The translations under genes and the position numbers were made by a program. A stretch of 64,000 nt of DNA from the IMG/VR virus record IMGVR_UViG_3300037502_002993, positions 124,001 to 188,000 of that record. One strand, given 5' to 3'. Of this stretch, positions 38,996 to 45,332 are shown piece after piece. Each line of letters starts with the position of its first letter. The first letter of the stretch is position 1. The notes under the pieces were generated by a model. The model was not told the origin of the DNA, made no database searches, and saw only the letters and a list, made by a program, of their open reading frames with translations.

Positions 38996-40756
38996 ATGGC
39001 ACAGCAGAAGTTTGATATCTTTTTTCGACGTGTGGGGATTCGTGATCGGGCCCACCTTGCCCGACCGCGTCTGTTCCCATTTGGGGAGTTCGCCTTCCCG
39101 TTTGAGAGTATCTATCACTTTAACCAGAGCAATGTGCACAATGGACCGACCCGAAACGACCCTGTACTGCAGAGCGTGGCCGGTCGTGTGTTCATTGAAC
39201 ACGTCACTGAACTCTCCGCTACCGAGGGGAACCCCCGTAAGACTTCGATCAACGTTAGAATGTTGGAGAATGACTTCCGGCGCCGTAGTCGGGGCCTTCG
39301 CCCCTTGCGTCGTGATGAGGCACTGGCGATCAACCCCCGTAATCTGCTTGTTGTGAACTATGCCATGCTTTATCCGACCTACCGCTATACGGTGTCGTTT
39401 AAGGCGGAGTACTATCGCTGGGTTAACATCGCCAGTACCTTCTGGCAGCGGGTAGCGGATCTCCATCAGCGTTTCCGCTGGCATCAGTTCGTGGAGGTGG
39501 GTGTCCCTGAGCGGGTGCCTGGGTATGAGGATTTTCTTCGTATCAGTAATGGCATCACGGCAAAGTCGCTCGATGCCTTTGCCGAACCCGGTGCCTTAGA
39601 CCTAGTGGATCTGTGGCAGTGGATGGGGGAGTCCCGTGAGGCGTCAAACCTCGCCAAGGTGAAAGACCCCAGTCTGGTGAACCTGATCTTCCGGGTACGG
39701 GGTCATTTCTGTCTCATGAACCTGGGACTGATCGACCAGTGGCGCAAAGCCCCAGAGGGGGAGTTGGCCCTTGAAGGGTTTGGATTGGAAGAGTGGGAGG
39801 AGGTTGGTCAGGAGATCGCCTCACTGGAGAGTGTGCAAAGTGATATCTTAGCGCCCACTCAACTGCAACGGCTGTTTCTCGCCCTGCTAAGGCGTCTTGG
39901 GAAGGTACAGAGTGGAGAAGAGGGGGTAGCGGACCCTGAAGAGGAAGCGCCCGTAGAGCGCGCCCAGGAGGCACCTAAGCGCATTACCGTCGATCAGGGG
40001 GATGACGATCCTGAAGGTGCAACTTCATCAAGCGGTACTGTAGGGGAGGTCAGTTCGAAAAAAGAGGACGATGTTCTCTCACTGCCACCTTTAGACGATG
40101 CGCTTAAGTTCCCTGATTTCGATCAGGAACCCGAACCCCCTGCTGAGCCTGACCCGAAAAGTGTGACCTACCGACCAGAGCGAGTCACACCCCCGCGAGA
40201 AGAGCGCCCGGTAGTGGAGAGTGATGACACTGAGGGCGATTACAGTACGGCACTTAAGGCGTATGCCGATCAGCAACTAGAAGCGGGACTGATCACGGCA
40301 GGTGCGCATAAACGGATACTGGCCGAGGCAGAACACTACAAGACGCTACCCAACCCATACGGGGATGAAGGGACCTTAGGGGAGAGTCTTGAGATCACTC
40401 AAGAAGACCTCTCACTTGAGGATCGTGAGACCTTCCCTGACCGCGATACCATCATTGACAAATCCATGCTGAAGAGCTCTCCACGGGAAATGACCCGGAA
40501 GTACGTGGAAAAGACCCTTAAGAAAGACGTCATGAATGCCGTGTTGGCAGCGACTCAGCACCAACAGGTGGTGATCAAGCGGTATAACGTGGAAGTGGTT
40601 CATGACAACATGAATCACTTTGAGGTCCACACGCTAACCTTGAAGCCCATTCATGGTCGGCAGTCCACTGTGCGGTTTCGTCTCCCCGTGGTAGATAAAG
40701 ACGGGCGTTTCATGGCAAATGGCCAGCGAAATCGGCTTCGTTTCCAGCGTGCGGAT
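38996..40756 (+). CDS. rpoB: Virion RNA polymerase beta subunit (phiKZ gp178-like), exon 1
   Basis: Ends RLRFQRAD on U40756; joins LPIRKI at 42305. Spliced product is 1442 aa (1761+1439+1129 nt including stop). Confidence 0.85.
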
Positions 40757-42304
40757 TAAAACTCTACCCTACTGTATAGTTTTTTCAGTAGAGGTAAGTG
40801 ATAATGGGACAACCACTTAAGTATACAACTGAAGATTTTATTGACACAGCTACCATGATGTTCGGTGACCACCTTAGCTACGAGAAAGCCGTTTATAGGG
40901 GTAAACGTCAGCGCCTTATTGTAACATGTACGCACCACGGGGAGTTCGATGTAAACCCACTGGTGTTTCTGATGAGTACCCACGGCTGCGCCAATTGTGC
41001 TAGGGATGAAACAAAAGAACGCTTCATACGTCGTTCTTTGGAACTTCATGGTGATCGTTACGACTATAGTCTCGTTGAAGTGGACGGATATACAGACCCT
41101 GTTACGGTTGTCTGTAAAACCCACGGTGCATTCGAAACATCTATTTACGGACATTCTGTAAGGGGCAATCAGTGTCCTAAATGTTCACGAGAACGCGACC
41201 GTACCTGCCCTAACGAGTGGATTAAAAAAGTTAAGAAGATCCACAAGGGTAAGTACGACTATAGTAAGGCAGTCTACATTCACGGTAAGTTGCCAGTTAC
41301 GATTATCTGTCCGCACCACGGGGAGTTCACCCAGCCAGCACGCTCCCACTACGCGGGACATGGATGTAAGCAGTGTCATATTCAGTTTGTTGCTAGGTCG
41401 AATAAAGAGAGATTTGTTAGGCAGGCCAAAGAAAAACATGGTGTTCAGTATGATTACAGCCGCGTAGTGTTTTTGACGACAAAGGAAAAGGTTGAGATAC
41501 TCTGTCGTAAACACGGACCGTTCTGGGTAACCCCGAACGCGCACGCATCTAGTGGCGCGGGCTGTCCACGCTGCATTGAGTCAAAGGGTGAACGAAGAAT
41601 TAGATTATTCCTAGGGAACCATAAAGTTCGGTTTATTCAGGAATATCGGATCGAACCCTTCAGGTATAGATACGATTTCTTCTTACCTGATTACAACTGC
41701 GTAATAGAACACCATGGTGGTCAGCACTACATGCCTGTTAAACGTTTTGGAGGGGAAAAAGCCTTTAAGCAATGTGTGCAGCGAGATAAGAACAAAAAAC
41801 ACATCGCAAAAAGGAAAGGGATTACTTATCGAGTCACTAACTACAAAATGATGAACAACAGCAAACTCGAAAAGAATTTAACCCGCATCCTTCTAGAACT
41901 CGGTCACTCTCTCGACCACTAACCCATTATTACCTATGGTCCGCTTAAAACCCCCCTAACTGCGGGAACCTGCTAATGATGCTGTTACTACCACTTGTCG
42001 GGGGAAACCCACGGCAACACCCACTCCAGTAATGGAAGTAGTGGGCAGGGTAAAAACGTAACAGCTAGGCACAACCGACGCAACGAAGTCCCTACGTTGG
42101 TCAATCGACCAATATGGGATGTGTTCAGAGGCCATCGAAAACTACAGCTTGTTTAATGCAAGCCTAATGACACAGGTATAGAACCCTGTGGTCTCCACGG
42201 AGATTAAAGTGAGTAGAGTAGCTGATTTCTATATCGGCGAAACGGGGGGCTTCTGTTTGCTATTCACGAACCAGAAGAAGATATGGTCCAATTTGAATTG
42301 ATTG
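40757..42304 (+). mobile_element. Group I intron (1548 nt) carrying a homing endonuclease in the P1 loop
   Basis: Exon ends in U and intron ends in G. Core elements P (AACTGCGGGAA), Q (ACCGACGCAAC), R (GTTCAGAGGCCAT) and S (AAGATATGGTCC) are present. IGS GTCCGC at 41939..41944 pairs with exon GCGGAT. Confidence 0.88.
40804..41922 (+). CDS. Intron-encoded homing endonuclease: four DUF723-like Cys/His repeats plus C-terminal Vsr/DUF559-like (EDxHD-type) nuclease
   Basis: Repeats Y..V.Y......V.I.C..HG.F...P..H..G..CP.C; C-terminal ESKGERRI...YDFFLP...IEHHGGQH; visibly more AT-rich than the flanks. Confidence 0.8.
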   Translation: MGQPLKYTTEDFIDTATMMFGDHLSYEKAVYRGKRQRLIVTCTHHGEFDVNPLVFLMSTHGCANCARDETKERFIRRSLELHGDRYDYSLVEVDGYTDPVTVVCKTHGAFETSIYGHSVRGNQCPKCSRERDRTCPNEWIKKVKKIHKGKYDYSKAVYIHGKLPVTIICPHHGEFTQPARSHYAGHGCKQCHIQFVARSNKERFVRQAKEKHGVQYDYSRVVFLTTKEKVEILCRKHGPFWVTPNAHASSGAGCPRCIESKGERRIRLFLGNHKVRFIQEYRIEPFRYRYDFFLPDYNCVIEHHGGQHYMPVKRFGGEKAFKQCVQRDKNKKHIAKRKGITYRVTNYKMMNNSKLEKNLTRILLELGHSLDH

Positions 42305-43743
42305 CTTCCAATTCGTAAGATCTCTCCAAGCAGGGTTGCTCTCACCTCTTACTATAATAAAACGTTTGTCGACCGCTCTTCTCGCTCTACGAATAACTTT
42401 GCTCAATGGGTCACACGCCAAATGACCCAGATCGGACTTGATCCGGATAACGACCAGATCACTAACCTGAAGTTAGGTAATGCGTTTGATCAGTCCATTG
42501 AAGTGCCAAGGGTTTACTCCTTGCTCTCAGCGCGCTTTACGCAATTTGCCGTAGGGCCACTACAGTTCTACTTGAGCTACCATAAACGAGCTGCTCATTT
42601 TGAACAACATGGGATACGGGTAGAACAGGTAGAGAAAGAAGGGCGAACGGTAATCGGGATGGATCGTGAGTCATTAAGTCCCATCACGGTAGATGCCAGT
42701 GACACTTTCTATCTGGGCGATGAGCCCTTAGGTACTCTGTGTCAGGTAGTGGGACTTCCCGAAGCCAAAGCACCGCTGGATATCGCGGAGGTAGGGGTTT
42801 CCAATAAGGTCATCCCGGTGGGGTTGGTGCTGGCTTACCAGATGGGGCTGTCTAAACTCATCGAGAAACTTAATTGTGATGTGGCCAGACACCGACGGGG
42901 CAGTCGGTTTGAAATGGCCGATGATGAGTACAGTGTGGTCTTTCAGGATGAGGTGCTTGTCTTCTCGCGGTTGGATCGACGGGCCTCACTGGTGTTGGCG
43001 GGACTGAATCGCTATCACCGCGCCCTACGGCAATTCAGTGTCTGGGACTTTGATCGTAAAGACGTCTACCACAACGTCCTTCTGGATCAGGGCCTTGGGG
43101 TGCGCTACCTGCGGGAAATCGATACCCTCTTTAATGTCTGGGTTGATCCCATCACAAAAGGACTCCTGGAGGAGATGGGGGAACCCACTGACTTTGGAGG
43201 ACTGCTCCTCAGAAGTGCTGACCTACTGCTACACGACCACGCTCCCAATGAGGTAGAAGGGGAGTACATGCGCTATCGGGGGTATGAGCGCATGGCAGGG
43301 ATGGTCTATGGGGAGCTGGCGAGGGCCTGCAAAGCCTATCACGCGCGCAGTCACTACGGTGATGCTGCAGTGGATCTAAATCCCCACCAGGTGTGGCAGC
43401 GCATTGTGGGTGACCCCTCATCCATGATCGTGGAGGAAGCCAACCCCTTTACGGTGGTCAATGAACAGGAAATCATGACCTATCGTGGAGATGGCGGTCG
43501 TAGTGGTAAGTCCATGGTGAAGCGGACGCGTATCTACTCTGACACTGATGTCGGGGTAGTGAGTGAATCCACCCTAGATTCGGGAGATGTCGGGGTAGTG
43601 GCGTACCTGGCCCCTGATGCGAACTTCACCTCCACTCGGGGATTGACCCGACGTTACGATAAAAGTAAGGATGGCGCAGCAACCCTCCTATCCACTGCTG
43701 CACTCAATGCCCCTTGTGCGGACAGAGATGACGCCAAGAGAAT
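42305..43743 (+). CDS. rpoB: Virion RNAP beta subunit, exon 2
   Basis: LPIRKISP...SESTLDSGDVG...ADRDDAKR-AT; continues exon 1 in frame after splicing. Confidence 0.85.
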
Positions 43744-44203
43744 CCGATAAGTTGGTTCCCCCAGCAGGTAACTGTTGGGTAAACACTCCTCTAATTGCTG
43801 GGACCTCTCGTAAGACCTTAGGTACGATCCCGTTCCGAAAGGAAGCCATGGATAGCCGGGCCTGTAAGAATCCTAAGGATAGAGACAACCATGCAGCGAA
43901 GTCCCTAAGCCTACTCAACGAGTAGGGATGGGATGTGTTCATCGACTATCGAAAGGCGCCCATTAGGGCGAACTGAGTAGAGTAGGGCCAAGCGGTAGGC
44001 CGCTAACGTGGAATGGCGTTAGTTATAAGTCCTTTAAACCGAAACGGGGAGCTTCCTACTTGTTAAGAGAGGAAGAAGATATAGTCAGTCCTTTAGCGAG
44101 AGTTAAAGGTAACCATGGAGTGGTTAGCTCGATCTAGCGAATCGGGTTTGGAAAGGGAAGGAGGATTTCACCCAATTAGGGTGATCTTCATCTGTGTACA
44201 GCG
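43744..44203 (+). ncRNA. Group I intron (460 nt), no endonuclease ORF
   Basis: P (AATTGCTGGGA), Q (CCATGCAGCG), R (GTTCATCGACTAT) and S (AAGATATAGTC); removal restores DDAKR-I-NFISVQ; exon GAAU pairs with GUUC at 43755..43758. Confidence 0.88.
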
Positions 44204-45332
44204 CAACTTTATCTCAGTGCAAGCAAGACAGGGCATTTGGGCGGAAGGGTATACGGTCACGCCACTAAGGACGGGGTATGAACAGGTACTGGCCTCACGG
44301 GTAACAGATCTGTTCGCGACCATGGCACAGCAAGATGGGAAGGTTACGTCAGTGGAAGAGAATTCCATTGTGGTGACCTATAAGGATGGGACGCAGGAGA
44401 AGGTCCTTCTTGGGAAGCGCTACGGTAAAGCCGCTGGGTATACCTACCCACAGACCTTGGTAACGGATCTAAAGGTAGGGGATAAGGTTAAGTCAGGTGG
44501 GGTGATTGCGTATAATCGTAACTATTTCATGCCTGATACCTTTAATCCCGGTCATGTGGTATTGAAAGCGGGGGTAATGTGTAAGGTGGCCCTGATGGAC
44601 CCCATCGATGCTTTGGAAGATGGGTCTGTTATCTCTGAGGAGATCGCCAAGCAGTTCACCACGCAAACCAGTGAGGTCAGGACCCTGCAAGCGCGTTTTG
44701 ATCAGTCTGTCAGGGACCTAGTGAAAGTCGGCGATCATGTGGACTTGGATTCCATTCTATGCATTATTGAAGACCCGGAGATCCGCGATAATCCCCTGTT
44801 CAATGACATTGCCATGGATACCTTAAGAAAGCTCTCTTCCCACACCCCACGAGCAAAAGTGACAGGGGTGGTGAGCCGAGTTGAGGTGTTCTATCATGGT
44901 GAGTTTGAGGACATGTCAGAGTCCCTTCAAGGTGTGGCGGGTCAATCCAATCGTCGTCGCCGTCAAGAGGCCAAGGCCTCAGGGCAGCCCGCTTTCGATG
45001 GTCAGGTGGATACGGGCTTTCGTATCCGTGGGGCCGCCCTTGATCCGGATAGCGTGGCCATTCAGGTGACCATTGATCATGACGTGGGGGTAACTGCGGG
45101 GGATAAGTTGGTGTACGCCAGCCAGCTGAAGTCCGTCATTTCTCGTGTCATGACGGGTCGTAATGAAACCGAAAGCGGTGAAGCCATCGATGCCCTCTTT
45201 GGTAACACCTCTGTGGAGGATCGGATGGTGTTGTCCCCCAAACTCATGGGCACCACCAATACCCTACTCCGGGTCCTTTCCCAACATATCGCATCTGTCT
45301 ATCGAGGACGTAGTGATGTCAAGAGACCGTAA
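44204..45332 (+). CDS. rpoB: Virion RNAP beta subunit, exon 3
   Basis: NFISVQ...LRTGYE...EDGSVISE...GDKLVYASQLKSVI (GDK motif of beta). Confidence 0.85.

What the first reader, a model, noticed from the sequence alone, without database searches (positions are those of the whole stretch)
40757..42304. Group I intron in the virion RNAP beta gene with its endonuclease inserted in the P1 loop
Seen: the 5' exon end GCGGAU can pair with GUCCGC (41939..41944), giving a U-G pair at the splice site. That guide lies about 1180 nt downstream, so the whole 1.1 kb nuclease ORF is looped out of P1. The nuclease has four DUF723-like repeats and a Vsr-like domain rather than HNH or GIY-YIG. Established: phage intron ORFs are more often in other peripheral loops; the Vsr-like EDxHD family is typified by I-Bth0305I; the phiPA3 intron nuclease gp210 cuts the RNAP gene of co-infecting phiKZ. 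Inference: this nuclease may act as a competition weapon against intronless alleles of an essential virion RNAP gene.
Basis: partly seen in the sequence, partly recalled or inferred. Interest (0 to 1): 0.62.

Follow-up and report, generated by a model that had tools for sequence, protein, structure and literature searches.

The report
Phage RNAP intron, nuclease in P1
A jumbo phage's virion RNA polymerase gene is interrupted by a self-splicing group I intron that carries its homing-nuclease gene inside the first helix loop; the type of element is known, but this family and layout have not been described in the papers I could search.

Summary
Window 40757-42304 is a 1548-nt group I intron in the phiKZ gp178-like virion RNAP beta gene of an uncultured nucleus-forming (chimallin-encoding) jumbo phage. 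Splicing at 40756|42305 restores exact colinearity with intronless homologues.

The guide GUCCGC (41939-41944) does pair with the exon end GCGGAU. In 15 homologous introns at this site, six different exon hexamers each have a matching guide at a fixed distance from P4. The P1 loop ranges from 32 to 1367 nt.

A sludge metagenome holds the same intron (about 98.5% identical) lacking exactly 40794-41929, the nuclease cassette.

The 372-aa protein has four DUF723/CapR zinc modules and a Vsr-like domain. Its best structural match is I-Bth0305I (Z 12.2).

Cultured Vibrio phages vB_pir03 and Yong XC31 carry the same intron; the vB_pir03 paper does not mention one.

An extra feature is a covarying hairpin joining the intron tail to exon 2 across the 3' splice site.

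Splicing, cleavage and the "competition weapon" idea remain untested. PhiPA3 gp210 is an HNH enzyme at a different site, close to this gene's second, ORF-less intron (43744-44203).

The parts
38996..40756 (+). Exon 1 of the gp178-like virion RNAP beta gene (587 codons, ends ..FQRAD)
   Evidence: phrog_3148 profile positions 5-574. Residue 587 aligns with phiKZ gp178 residue 594 and Noxifer residue 595.
40751..40758 (+). P1 5' strand (GCGGAU|UA). The 5' splice site follows U40756. An in-frame UAA stop lies at 40757-40759.
   Evidence: GAU followed by an in-frame stop is kept in most homologues; L022 and L033 read AAA and L027 UUU there.
40761..40799 (+). Hairpin in the P1 loop that contains the Shine-Dalgarno AGAGG (40790-40794) of the nuclease ORF
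   Evidence: RNAfold of the first 62 intron nt gives -15.4 kcal/mol. Equivalent hairpins with different sequence occur in L007, L006 and L010.
40794..41929 (+). Nuclease cassette (1136 nt), absent from a natural near-identical copy of the intron
   Evidence: Run X9 contig joins 40793 to 41930. Depth is about 30 on both flanks and 0 over the ORF.
40804..41922 (+). Homing-endonuclease ORF, 372 aa, with four DUF723/CapR zinc modules (CxxH..CxxC at C42/H45/C62/C65, C104/H107/C124/C127, C169/H172/C188/C191, C234/H237/C254/C257)
   Evidence: Pfam PF05265 42.5 bits, 4 stretches. Invariant Cys/His columns in alignment A1. AF2 pLDDT 89.4. 4107 relatives at E<=1e-10.
41581..41907 (+). Vsr-like (EDxHD-type) nuclease domain, residues 260-368. 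E263, D291, E302, H308 and D328 are conserved.
   Evidence: VIA-align against 3r3p_A: Z 12.2, rmsd 2.5 A, 96 of 97 residues. Against Vsr 1cw0_A: Z 11.8. Foldseek ranks the same two first. Conserved columns.
41937..41944 (+). Internal guide sequence, the P1 3' strand (UG GUCCGC). G41939 pairs with U40756.
   Evidence: six covarying exon/guide pairs.
41951..42288 (+). Ribozyme core. P3 41951-56/42244-49; P4 41961-64/42079-82; P5 with three-way P5a-c 41971-42071; P6 42083-42124; P7 42130-34/42284-88; extra helices between P7 and P3' (P7.1/P7.2-like) 42171-42238; P8 42250-55/42272-77. There is no P2.
   Evidence: RF00028 44.4 bits, E 1.3e-9. RNAalifold on 8 sequences: 83 pairs, 50 with compensatory changes. 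Coordinates.
42295..42314 (+). Hairpin across the 3' splice site. Intron GAAUUG (42295-42300) pairs with exon 2 CAAUUC (42309-42314). The terminal G42304 and the first exon bases lie in the loop.
   Evidence: Present in 12 of 14 homologues and covaries with the Pro-Ile/Leu-Arg codon choice.
42305..43743 (+). Exon 2 (starts LPIRK, ends ..DDAKRI in phase 2)
   Evidence: phrog_3148 positions 575-1054. Residue 1 aligns with phiKZ 595 and residue 480 with phiKZ 1076.
43744..44203 (+). Second, ORF-less group I intron in the same gene (460 nt)
   Evidence: RF00028 78.2 bits. Boundaries come from colinearity with phiKZ 1076/1077.
44204..45332 (+). Exon 3 (starts with one carried base, then NFISVQ..)
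   Evidence: phrog_3148 positions 1055-1423.

Best explanation
Window 40757-42304 is a mobile, self-splicing group I intron. Its extra helices between P7 and P3' resemble subgroup IA. It interrupts the virion RNA polymerase beta gene of a nucleus-forming jumbo phage between the codons for ..QRAD and LPIRK.. .

Helix P1 forms between the last six exon bases plus two intron bases and a guide located 1182 nt downstream. The whole nuclease gene therefore sits in the P1 loop. After guanosine attack at U40756 and exon ligation after G42304, the mRNA encodes an uninterrupted gp178-like protein.

The loop encodes a 372-aa homing endonuclease. Four DUF723/CapR zinc modules presumably read a long DNA site. 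A Vsr-like (EDxHD-type) domain presumably cuts intronless alleles near the insertion site, so that repair copies the intron in. Its ribosome-binding site lies in a conserved hairpin, and a stop codon sits exactly at the 5' splice site.

Shown here: the anatomy, the covariation, the colinearity, the protein fold, and presence or absence of the nuclease cassette in natural copies. Inferred: splicing itself, nuclease activity, homing, and control of translation by the hairpin.
For: Gene colinearity is exact at 40756|42305.

Core: RF00028 E 1.3e-9. Homologues at the same site score 52.7-60.6 bits, above the cut-off of 50. 50 of 83 consensus pairs have compensatory changes. P7 also covaries.

P1: six exon/guide hexamer pairs in 15 introns, with the guide at a fixed distance from P4 while the loop varies from 32 to 1367 nt.

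A natural ORF-less copy joins 40793|41930, and its minimum-energy fold contains P1. Other ORF-less relatives are 405-688 nt long.

Nuclease: DUF723 in 4 stretches. All zinc ligands and E263/D291/E302/H308/D328 are conserved. Z 12.2 to I-Bth0305I.

Intronless alleles exist in relatives L008 and L009 and in phiKZ and Noxifer. The genome encodes chimallin.
Against: The window copy scores 44.4 bits, below Rfam's curated 50. It lacks P2; so do the two Vibrio phage copies, whereas 12 relatives have it. P10 would be a single base pair (sequence). No RNA run holds the locus, so splicing is unobserved. Nuclease activity is untested. In a nucleus-forming phage the enzyme must be imported into the phage nucleus to reach DNA, and PhiPA3 gp210 had to be forced into the phiKZ nucleus (PMC11620839).
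Confidence: 0.85

Rival explanations
1. The intron splices, but its nuclease is more than a selfish homing enzyme. It would cut the essential vRNAP gene of co-infecting intronless chimalliviruses and lower their yield, as the first reader proposed (interference competition).
For: PhiPA3 gp210, encoded in an intron in the same gene, nicks phiKZ gp178 and blocks virion production (PMC11620839). The ORF here is intact, with all conserved residues. Intronless alleles exist in related phages. Near-identical phages occur in several habitats.
Against: Nothing here tests cleavage or competition. The enzyme family and the site both differ from gp210. Natural copies have lost the ORF, as expected for a dispensable selfish gene. 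The gp210 effect on phiKZ required forced nuclear import.
Confidence: 0.25
2. The intron splices, but the nuclease in this copy is an inactive passenger on its way to loss, so the intron is now inherited only vertically.
For: ORF-less and short-loop relatives are common: 405-688 nt, plus the X9 variant. Yong XC31 has only a partial annotated ORF.
Against: The reading frame is full length. All 16 zinc ligands and the conserved acidic and His residues are kept. The model is confident, pLDDT 89.4. Protein identity to relatives is 44-50% with no frame breaks.
Confidence: 0.15
3. There is no splicing. The gene is split into separate subunit genes with a free-standing nuclease gene between them, as happens elsewhere in jumbo-phage RNA polymerases.
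For: Chimallivirus RNAP subunits are naturally split into several polypeptides. An ORF list alone shows three separate frames. The vB_pir03 annotation treats them as separate genes.
Against: A covarying ribozyme core fills the gap. The exon end covaries with the guide. Exon 2 has no ribosome-binding site, and homology starts at its first codon. ORF-less copies keep the core.
Confidence: 0.03

Closest known systems
PhiPA3 gp210 intron in the vRNAP beta gene gp211/209 (Birkholz et al. 2024, PMC11620839)
   Same: Same host gene in a related chimallivirus. It is a group I intron with an encoded endonuclease, and has the same order: exon, ORF, ribozyme core, exon.
   Different: gp210 is an HNH nickase. 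Its site follows the conserved DD (phiKZ D1072), about 480 codons downstream. That lies 4 codons before this gene's second, ORF-less intron. I could not locate its guide sequence, so P1-loop placement there is unproven.
I-Bth0305I, EDxHD homing endonuclease of the recA intron of Bacillus phage 0305phi8-36 (PMC3239194; PDB 3R3P)
   Same: Best structural match of the C-terminal domain: Z 12.2, rmsd 2.5 A, 96 of 97 residues, 21% identity. It is phage-borne and encoded in a group I intron.
   Different: Its ORF interrupts P5, and its N-terminal part has two NUMOD/HTH motifs. [quoted passage not shown] No sequence-level match to PDB chains was found.
Nuclear S1389 group I introns of myxomycetes with His-Cys box nuclease genes in P1 (PMC8395846)
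   Same: The nuclease gene is inserted in P1 in sense orientation.
   Different: Those are eukaryotic rDNA introns with a different nuclease family, and some of their nuclease genes contain spliceosomal introns. None is in a phage.
CapR/DUF723 zinc-module arrays in phage T5orf172 homing endonucleases (PMC10448857)
   Same: The same repeated zinc DNA-binding module is used as an array in phage homing nucleases.
   Different: There the array is fused to T5orf172 domains. Here it is fused to a Vsr-like domain. One relative, P0006, carries an HNH domain instead.
phiKZ gp55/gp56/gp56.1 intron at N|ADFDGD of the non-virion RNAP beta' gene
   Same: Chimallivirus RNAP gene with the order exon, nuclease ORF, group I core (75.6 bits), exon. 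This genome has introns at that motif too, one of them a paralogue of the intron studied.
   Different: Different gene and a different nuclease. Its guide sequence was not resolved here.

Membership tests
Group I intron (Rfam RF00028) | Conserved catalytic core (P3-P8, J8/7, P7) | tested here: met
   Core aligned over model positions 1-253, E 1.3e-9. 50 of 83 consensus pairs have compensatory changes in 8 sequences. P7 reads GGCCA/UGGUC, GACCA/UGGUC and GACUA/UAGUC.
Group I intron (Rfam RF00028) | Score at or above Rfam's curated gathering score (50 bits) | tested here: inconclusive
   The window copy scores 44.4 bits. Homologues at the same site score 59.2 (L006), 60.6 (L030), 55.3 (L017, L033), 55.0 (L023) and 52.7 (L016). 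Others score 42.4-46.7. The long P1 loop and the exon-paired tail cost score.
Group I intron (Rfam RF00028) | P1 between the 5' exon end and an internal guide, with a U-G pair at the splice site | tested here: met
   U40756 pairs with G41939. Six covarying exon/guide hexamers occur in 15 introns.
Group I intron (Rfam RF00028) | Terminal G at the 3' splice site | tested here: met
   G42304. The position is fixed by codon-exact colinearity with phiKZ and Noxifer.
Group I intron (Rfam RF00028) | Guanosine-dependent self-splicing | not testable with these tools
   No RNA run holds the locus.
Subgroup IA | Extra helices P7.1/P7.2 between P7 and P3' | tested here: inconclusive
   Covarying helices at 42171-42190, 42191-42204 and 42221-42238 lie in that position. 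No subgroup-specific model was run.
EDxHD (Vsr-like) homing endonucleases | Vsr-like nuclease fold | tested here: met
   3r3p_A Z 12.2; 1cw0_A Z 11.8; 1vsr Z 10.9. Foldseek ranks 1-4 are the same entries.
EDxHD (Vsr-like) homing endonucleases | Conserved E, D, H, D catalytic residues | tested here: inconclusive
   E263, D291, E302, H308 and D328 are at least 90% conserved in 20 homologues. No residue-by-residue superposition on D196/H213/D222 of I-Bth0305I was made.
EDxHD (Vsr-like) homing endonucleases | Cuts the intronless allele next to the insertion site | not testable with these tools
   Needs an enzyme assay.
DUF723 / CapR zinc modules | Match to Pfam PF05265 above its cut-off, in repeats | tested here: met
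   42.5 bits against a cut-off of 20.9, in 4 stretches. Four invariant CxxH..CxxC sets.
gp210-type 'weaponised' intron endonuclease | HNH nickase at the DD site of gp178 that lowers a competitor's yield | tested here: not met
   The nuclease fold and the site both differ. The competition effect is not testable here. It may work in a similar way but is not a member.

The most novel reading that the evidence does not exclude
A family-wide layout of nuclease in the P1 loop plus a 3' splice-site hairpin may be tolerated because chimalliviruses transcribe inside a ribosome-free phage nucleus. The exon end would then stay free for the roughly 1.2 kb it takes to make the guide. On this reading, the Vsr-like/CapR nuclease is a second, independent interference weapon aimed at the essential vRNAP gene of co-infecting intronless phages.
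Probability: 0.2. Interest if true: 0.7.

Novelty: new variant of a known kind. Interest (0 to 1): 0.5.

Why it matters
The virion RNA polymerase gene of nucleus-forming phages is already the one documented case where an intron nuclease gives a phage a competitive edge. This work adds a second insertion site in that gene. The site is occupied in at least 15 phage genomes, including cultured Vibrio phages that could be tested at the bench. The nuclease belongs to a different family, and natural copies exist with and without it.

The family also offers clean material for two RNA questions. One is how P1 forms across more than 1 kb of coding RNA. The other is what a helix between the intron tail and the 3' exon does at the 3' splice site. 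Practically, it shows that 'split' RNAP genes and 'hypothetical proteins' in jumbo-phage annotations hide introns.

Tried and rejected
- Megablast of the region against phage records: no match.
- Two exact core motifs scanned in IMG/VR: no match. A degenerate P5 motif then found 20 loci.
- Sequence searches of PDB chains with the protein and with a 20-sequence profile: nothing useful.
- Pfam and NCBIfam on the C-terminal 124 residues: nothing. The fold search was needed.
- My first translation used a start one base off; corrected to 40804.
- A guide upstream of the ORF, which would put the ORF in P2 or J1/2: no complementary hexamer in 40757-40803, and covariation places the guide after the ORF.
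- RNAalifold paired the guide region with exon 2 (columns 2-11 with 518-526). I rejected this. It shows only one-sided changes, and it competes with P1 and with the better-supported 3' hairpin.
- RNA evidence: no RNA holder. X14, guessed to be RNA, covers only exon 2.
- I tried to locate the guides of the PhiPA3 gp210 and phiKZ gp56 introns to see whether their ORFs are also in P1. Only 3-bp candidates were found, so this is unresolved.
- The count of structure pairs was not used because it needs a long typed structure string. Pair counts were made in scripts instead.
- The joined (spliced) coding sequence was never built or searched. Exons were compared one by one by reference.

Full report
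**What is there**

The window is bases 124001-188000 of a 220,598-bp IMG/VR virus record with direct terminal repeats. ORFs 38996-40759, 42302-43750 and 44115-45332 match consecutive parts of one PHROG profile (phrog_3148, RNA polymerase beta subunit, 1424 positions): positions 5-574, 575-1054 and 1055-1423. The closest cultured relatives of exon 1 are Pseudomonas phages Noxifer, PhiPA3 (gp211) and phiKZ (gp178), the virion RNAP beta subunit (PMC11620839). The genome also encodes a chimallin (phiKZ gp54) homologue next to a gp55-like gene. It is therefore a nucleus-forming chimallivirus.

**Splice junction**

I compared the exons one at a time.
- Exon 1 residue 587 (..FQRAD) aligns with phiKZ gp178 residue 594 and Noxifer residue 595.
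- Exon 2 residue 1 (LPIRK..) aligns with residues 595 and 596.

Removing 40757-42304 therefore restores the protein with no residue gained or lost. I did not build or search the joined sequence.

**Ribozyme**

- Rfam's group I model matches 41813-42310 at 44.4 bits (E 1.3e-9 in a local search). That is below the curated 50 bits, so the whole-window scan missed it.
- Relatives settle the question. Two IMG/VR loci (L006, L007), two contigs found through the nuclease (L010, L012), and the cultured Vibrio phages vB_pir03 and Yong XC31 carry a homologous intron at the same codon boundary.
- A degenerate motif from P5 found 20 IMG/VR loci. Several more of them sit at this site.
- Six homologues score 52.7-60.6 bits.
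- RNAalifold on eight sequences gives P3, P4, P5 with a three-way extension, P6, helices between P7 and P3', and P8. That is 83 pairs, 50 of them with compensatory changes. P7 also covaries.
- The helices between P7 and P3' suggest subgroup IA. I did not test this with a subgroup model.

**P1 and the position of the ORF**

The guide GUCCGC at 41939-41944 pairs with the exon end GCGGAU, with U40756 opposite G41939. Two further pairs (U-G, A-U) extend the helix.

Across 15 introns the exon/guide hexamers are:
- GCGGAU/GUCCGC
- GGGGAU/GUCCCC
- GUGGAU/GUCCAC
- GGAGAU/GUCUCC
- AGUGAU/GUCACU
- GCGGAU/GUUCGC

The guide always lies 39-41 nt before J3/4-P4. The distance is 18 nt in the three copies without P2: the window, vB_pir03 and XC31. 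The distance from the 5' splice site to the guide ranges from 32 to 1367 nt. The variable, ORF-bearing segment is thus the P1 loop.

Direct support comes from a sludge metagenome (run X9). A 2179-nt contig about 98.5% identical to the window joins 40793 to 41930. Depth is about 30 on exon 1, the first 37 intron bases and the core, and zero over the ORF. The missing 1136 nt are the ORF plus 10 nt upstream and 7 nt downstream. The minimum-energy fold of that short form contains P1, the loop hairpin, P3 and the P5 extension.

ORF-less relatives of 405-688 nt have P1 loops of 32-317 nt. This looks like gain, decay and loss of the nuclease gene within this one loop. The same placement in distant Vibrio phages suggests that the X9 form is a loss (inference).

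**Expression signals (inferred)**

- GAU followed by an in-frame stop at the 5' splice site is kept in most copies (three read AAA or UUU there). Ribosomes on unspliced RNA would therefore stop at the splice site.
- The Shine-Dalgarno AGAGG (40790-40794) lies in a hairpin. L006, L007 and L010 have a hairpin in the same place with a different sequence.
- By analogy with T4 intron ORFs (my own knowledge), this hairpin may limit nuclease translation.

**Nuclease**

- The 372-aa protein has four DUF723/CapR zinc modules: Pfam 42.5 bits in 4 stretches, and four invariant CxxH..CxxC sets.
- Its C-terminal domain is missed by Pfam and NCBIfam.
- The AlphaFold model has pLDDT 89.4.
- Residues 260-368 match the I-Bth0305I catalytic domain best (Z 12.2, rmsd 2.5 A, 96 of 97 residues), then Vsr (Z 11.8).
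- E263, D291, E302, H308 and D328 are conserved.
- The family is large: 4107 proteins at E<=1e-10, some labelled very-short-patch-repair endonuclease.
- PHROG's label 'HNH endonuclease' probably reflects relatives such as P0006, which joins the same modules to an HNH domain.
- I-Bth0305I itself has NUMOD/HTH motifs, and its ORF sits in P5.

**An unexpected helix**

In 12 of 14 copies the intron tail pairs with exon 2 bases +4 to about +10. The terminal G and the first exon bases are left in a 6-8 nt loop. The stems are:
- GAAUUG/CAAUUC
- GAAUCGG/CCGAUUC
- GGAUUGG/CCAAUCC
- GGAUAGG/CCUAUCC
- AAGGGG/CCCCUU
- GAUGGG/CCCAUC

The intron tracks the synonymous codon choice of Pro-Ile/Leu-Arg. The helix occupies the usual place of P9, and a canonical P10 would be one base pair. 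The two Vibrio copies instead have an internal P9. I suggest that this helix presents the 3' splice site, but this is untested.

**Comparison with what is known**

- Group I introns with nucleases in chimallivirus RNAP genes are known. PhiPA3 gp210 is an HNH nickase whose intron follows the DD of gp178.
- That site is 4 codons before this gene's second intron (43744-44203, ORF-less, 78 bits). It is not the site of the intron studied.
- Nuclease genes in P1 are known in myxomycete nuclear introns.
- The vB_pir03 paper lists its copy of this nuclease as a homing endonuclease with an HHpred hit to 3R3P. It never mentions an intron.
- I found no paper describing this insertion site, this layout or the 3' helix. 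The library is incomplete.

**Verdict**

The observation and the structural interpretation are correct and extend to a whole intron family. Splicing, cleavage and any role in phage competition remain to be shown.

Noticed in passing
window 43744-44203: Second group I intron in the same gene (RF00028 78.2 bits). It is ORF-less, 460 nt, in phase 2, and extends about 95 nt beyond the Rfam match. It sits 4 codons downstream of the PhiPA3 gp210 intron site (after DD).
   Followed up: partly
own genome G000:C1 about 28402-26990, minus strand (outside the window; L002): The gp55-like non-virion RNAP beta' gene appears to carry three tandem group I introns inside the NADFDGD motif. They leave mini-exons of 6 nt (GCGGAU = AD) and 12 nt (UUUGAUGGUGAU = FDGD). 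The middle intron is a 68-73% identical paralogue of the intron studied. It follows the same exon hexamer GCGGAU and has the guide GUCC. The guide of the first intron was not resolved. phiKZ has a single intron at N|ADFDGD.
   Followed up: partly
own genome G000:C1 13574-13948(-) and 212895-213348(+): Two further RF00028 matches above the cut-off, making seven group I matches in one 220-kb phage genome. Their host genes were not examined.
   Followed up: no
window 42295-42314 and homologues: Covarying helix between the intron's 3' tail and exon 2 that encloses the 3' splice site. It constrains synonymous sites of the Pro-Ile/Leu-Arg codons. No known named element was identified for it.
   Followed up: partly
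L010 5133-5164: In this relative the nuclease ORF reads through the guide sequence and P2 and stops in J2/3, so coding and ribozyme sequence overlap.
   Followed up: no
L009 2669-3038, 8075-8422, 9394-9720; L034 3780-5383: Relatives that lack the intron at this site carry group I introns at other places in the same RNAP gene cluster. L034 has a member of this same intron family, about 1.6 kb long, at the exon 2/exon 3 junction. The gene is a hot spot with several insertion sites.
   Followed up: no
L013 (Vibrio phage vB_pir03) 1063-2383: A second layout of exon, endonuclease ORF (annotated HNH) and group I core (40.7 bits) lies between two other RNAP fragments in this cultured phage. It is not annotated as an intron either.
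   Followed up: no
P0006 (relative of the nuclease): The same DUF723 module array is fused to an N-terminal HNH domain and lacks the Vsr-like domain. The DNA-binding array is shuffled between nuclease types.
   Followed up: no
runs X1-X11: Near-identical sequence occurs in subsurface, freshwater and sludge metagenomes, and in runs labelled with a coded organism A. The host and the meaning of that label are unknown.
   Followed up: no
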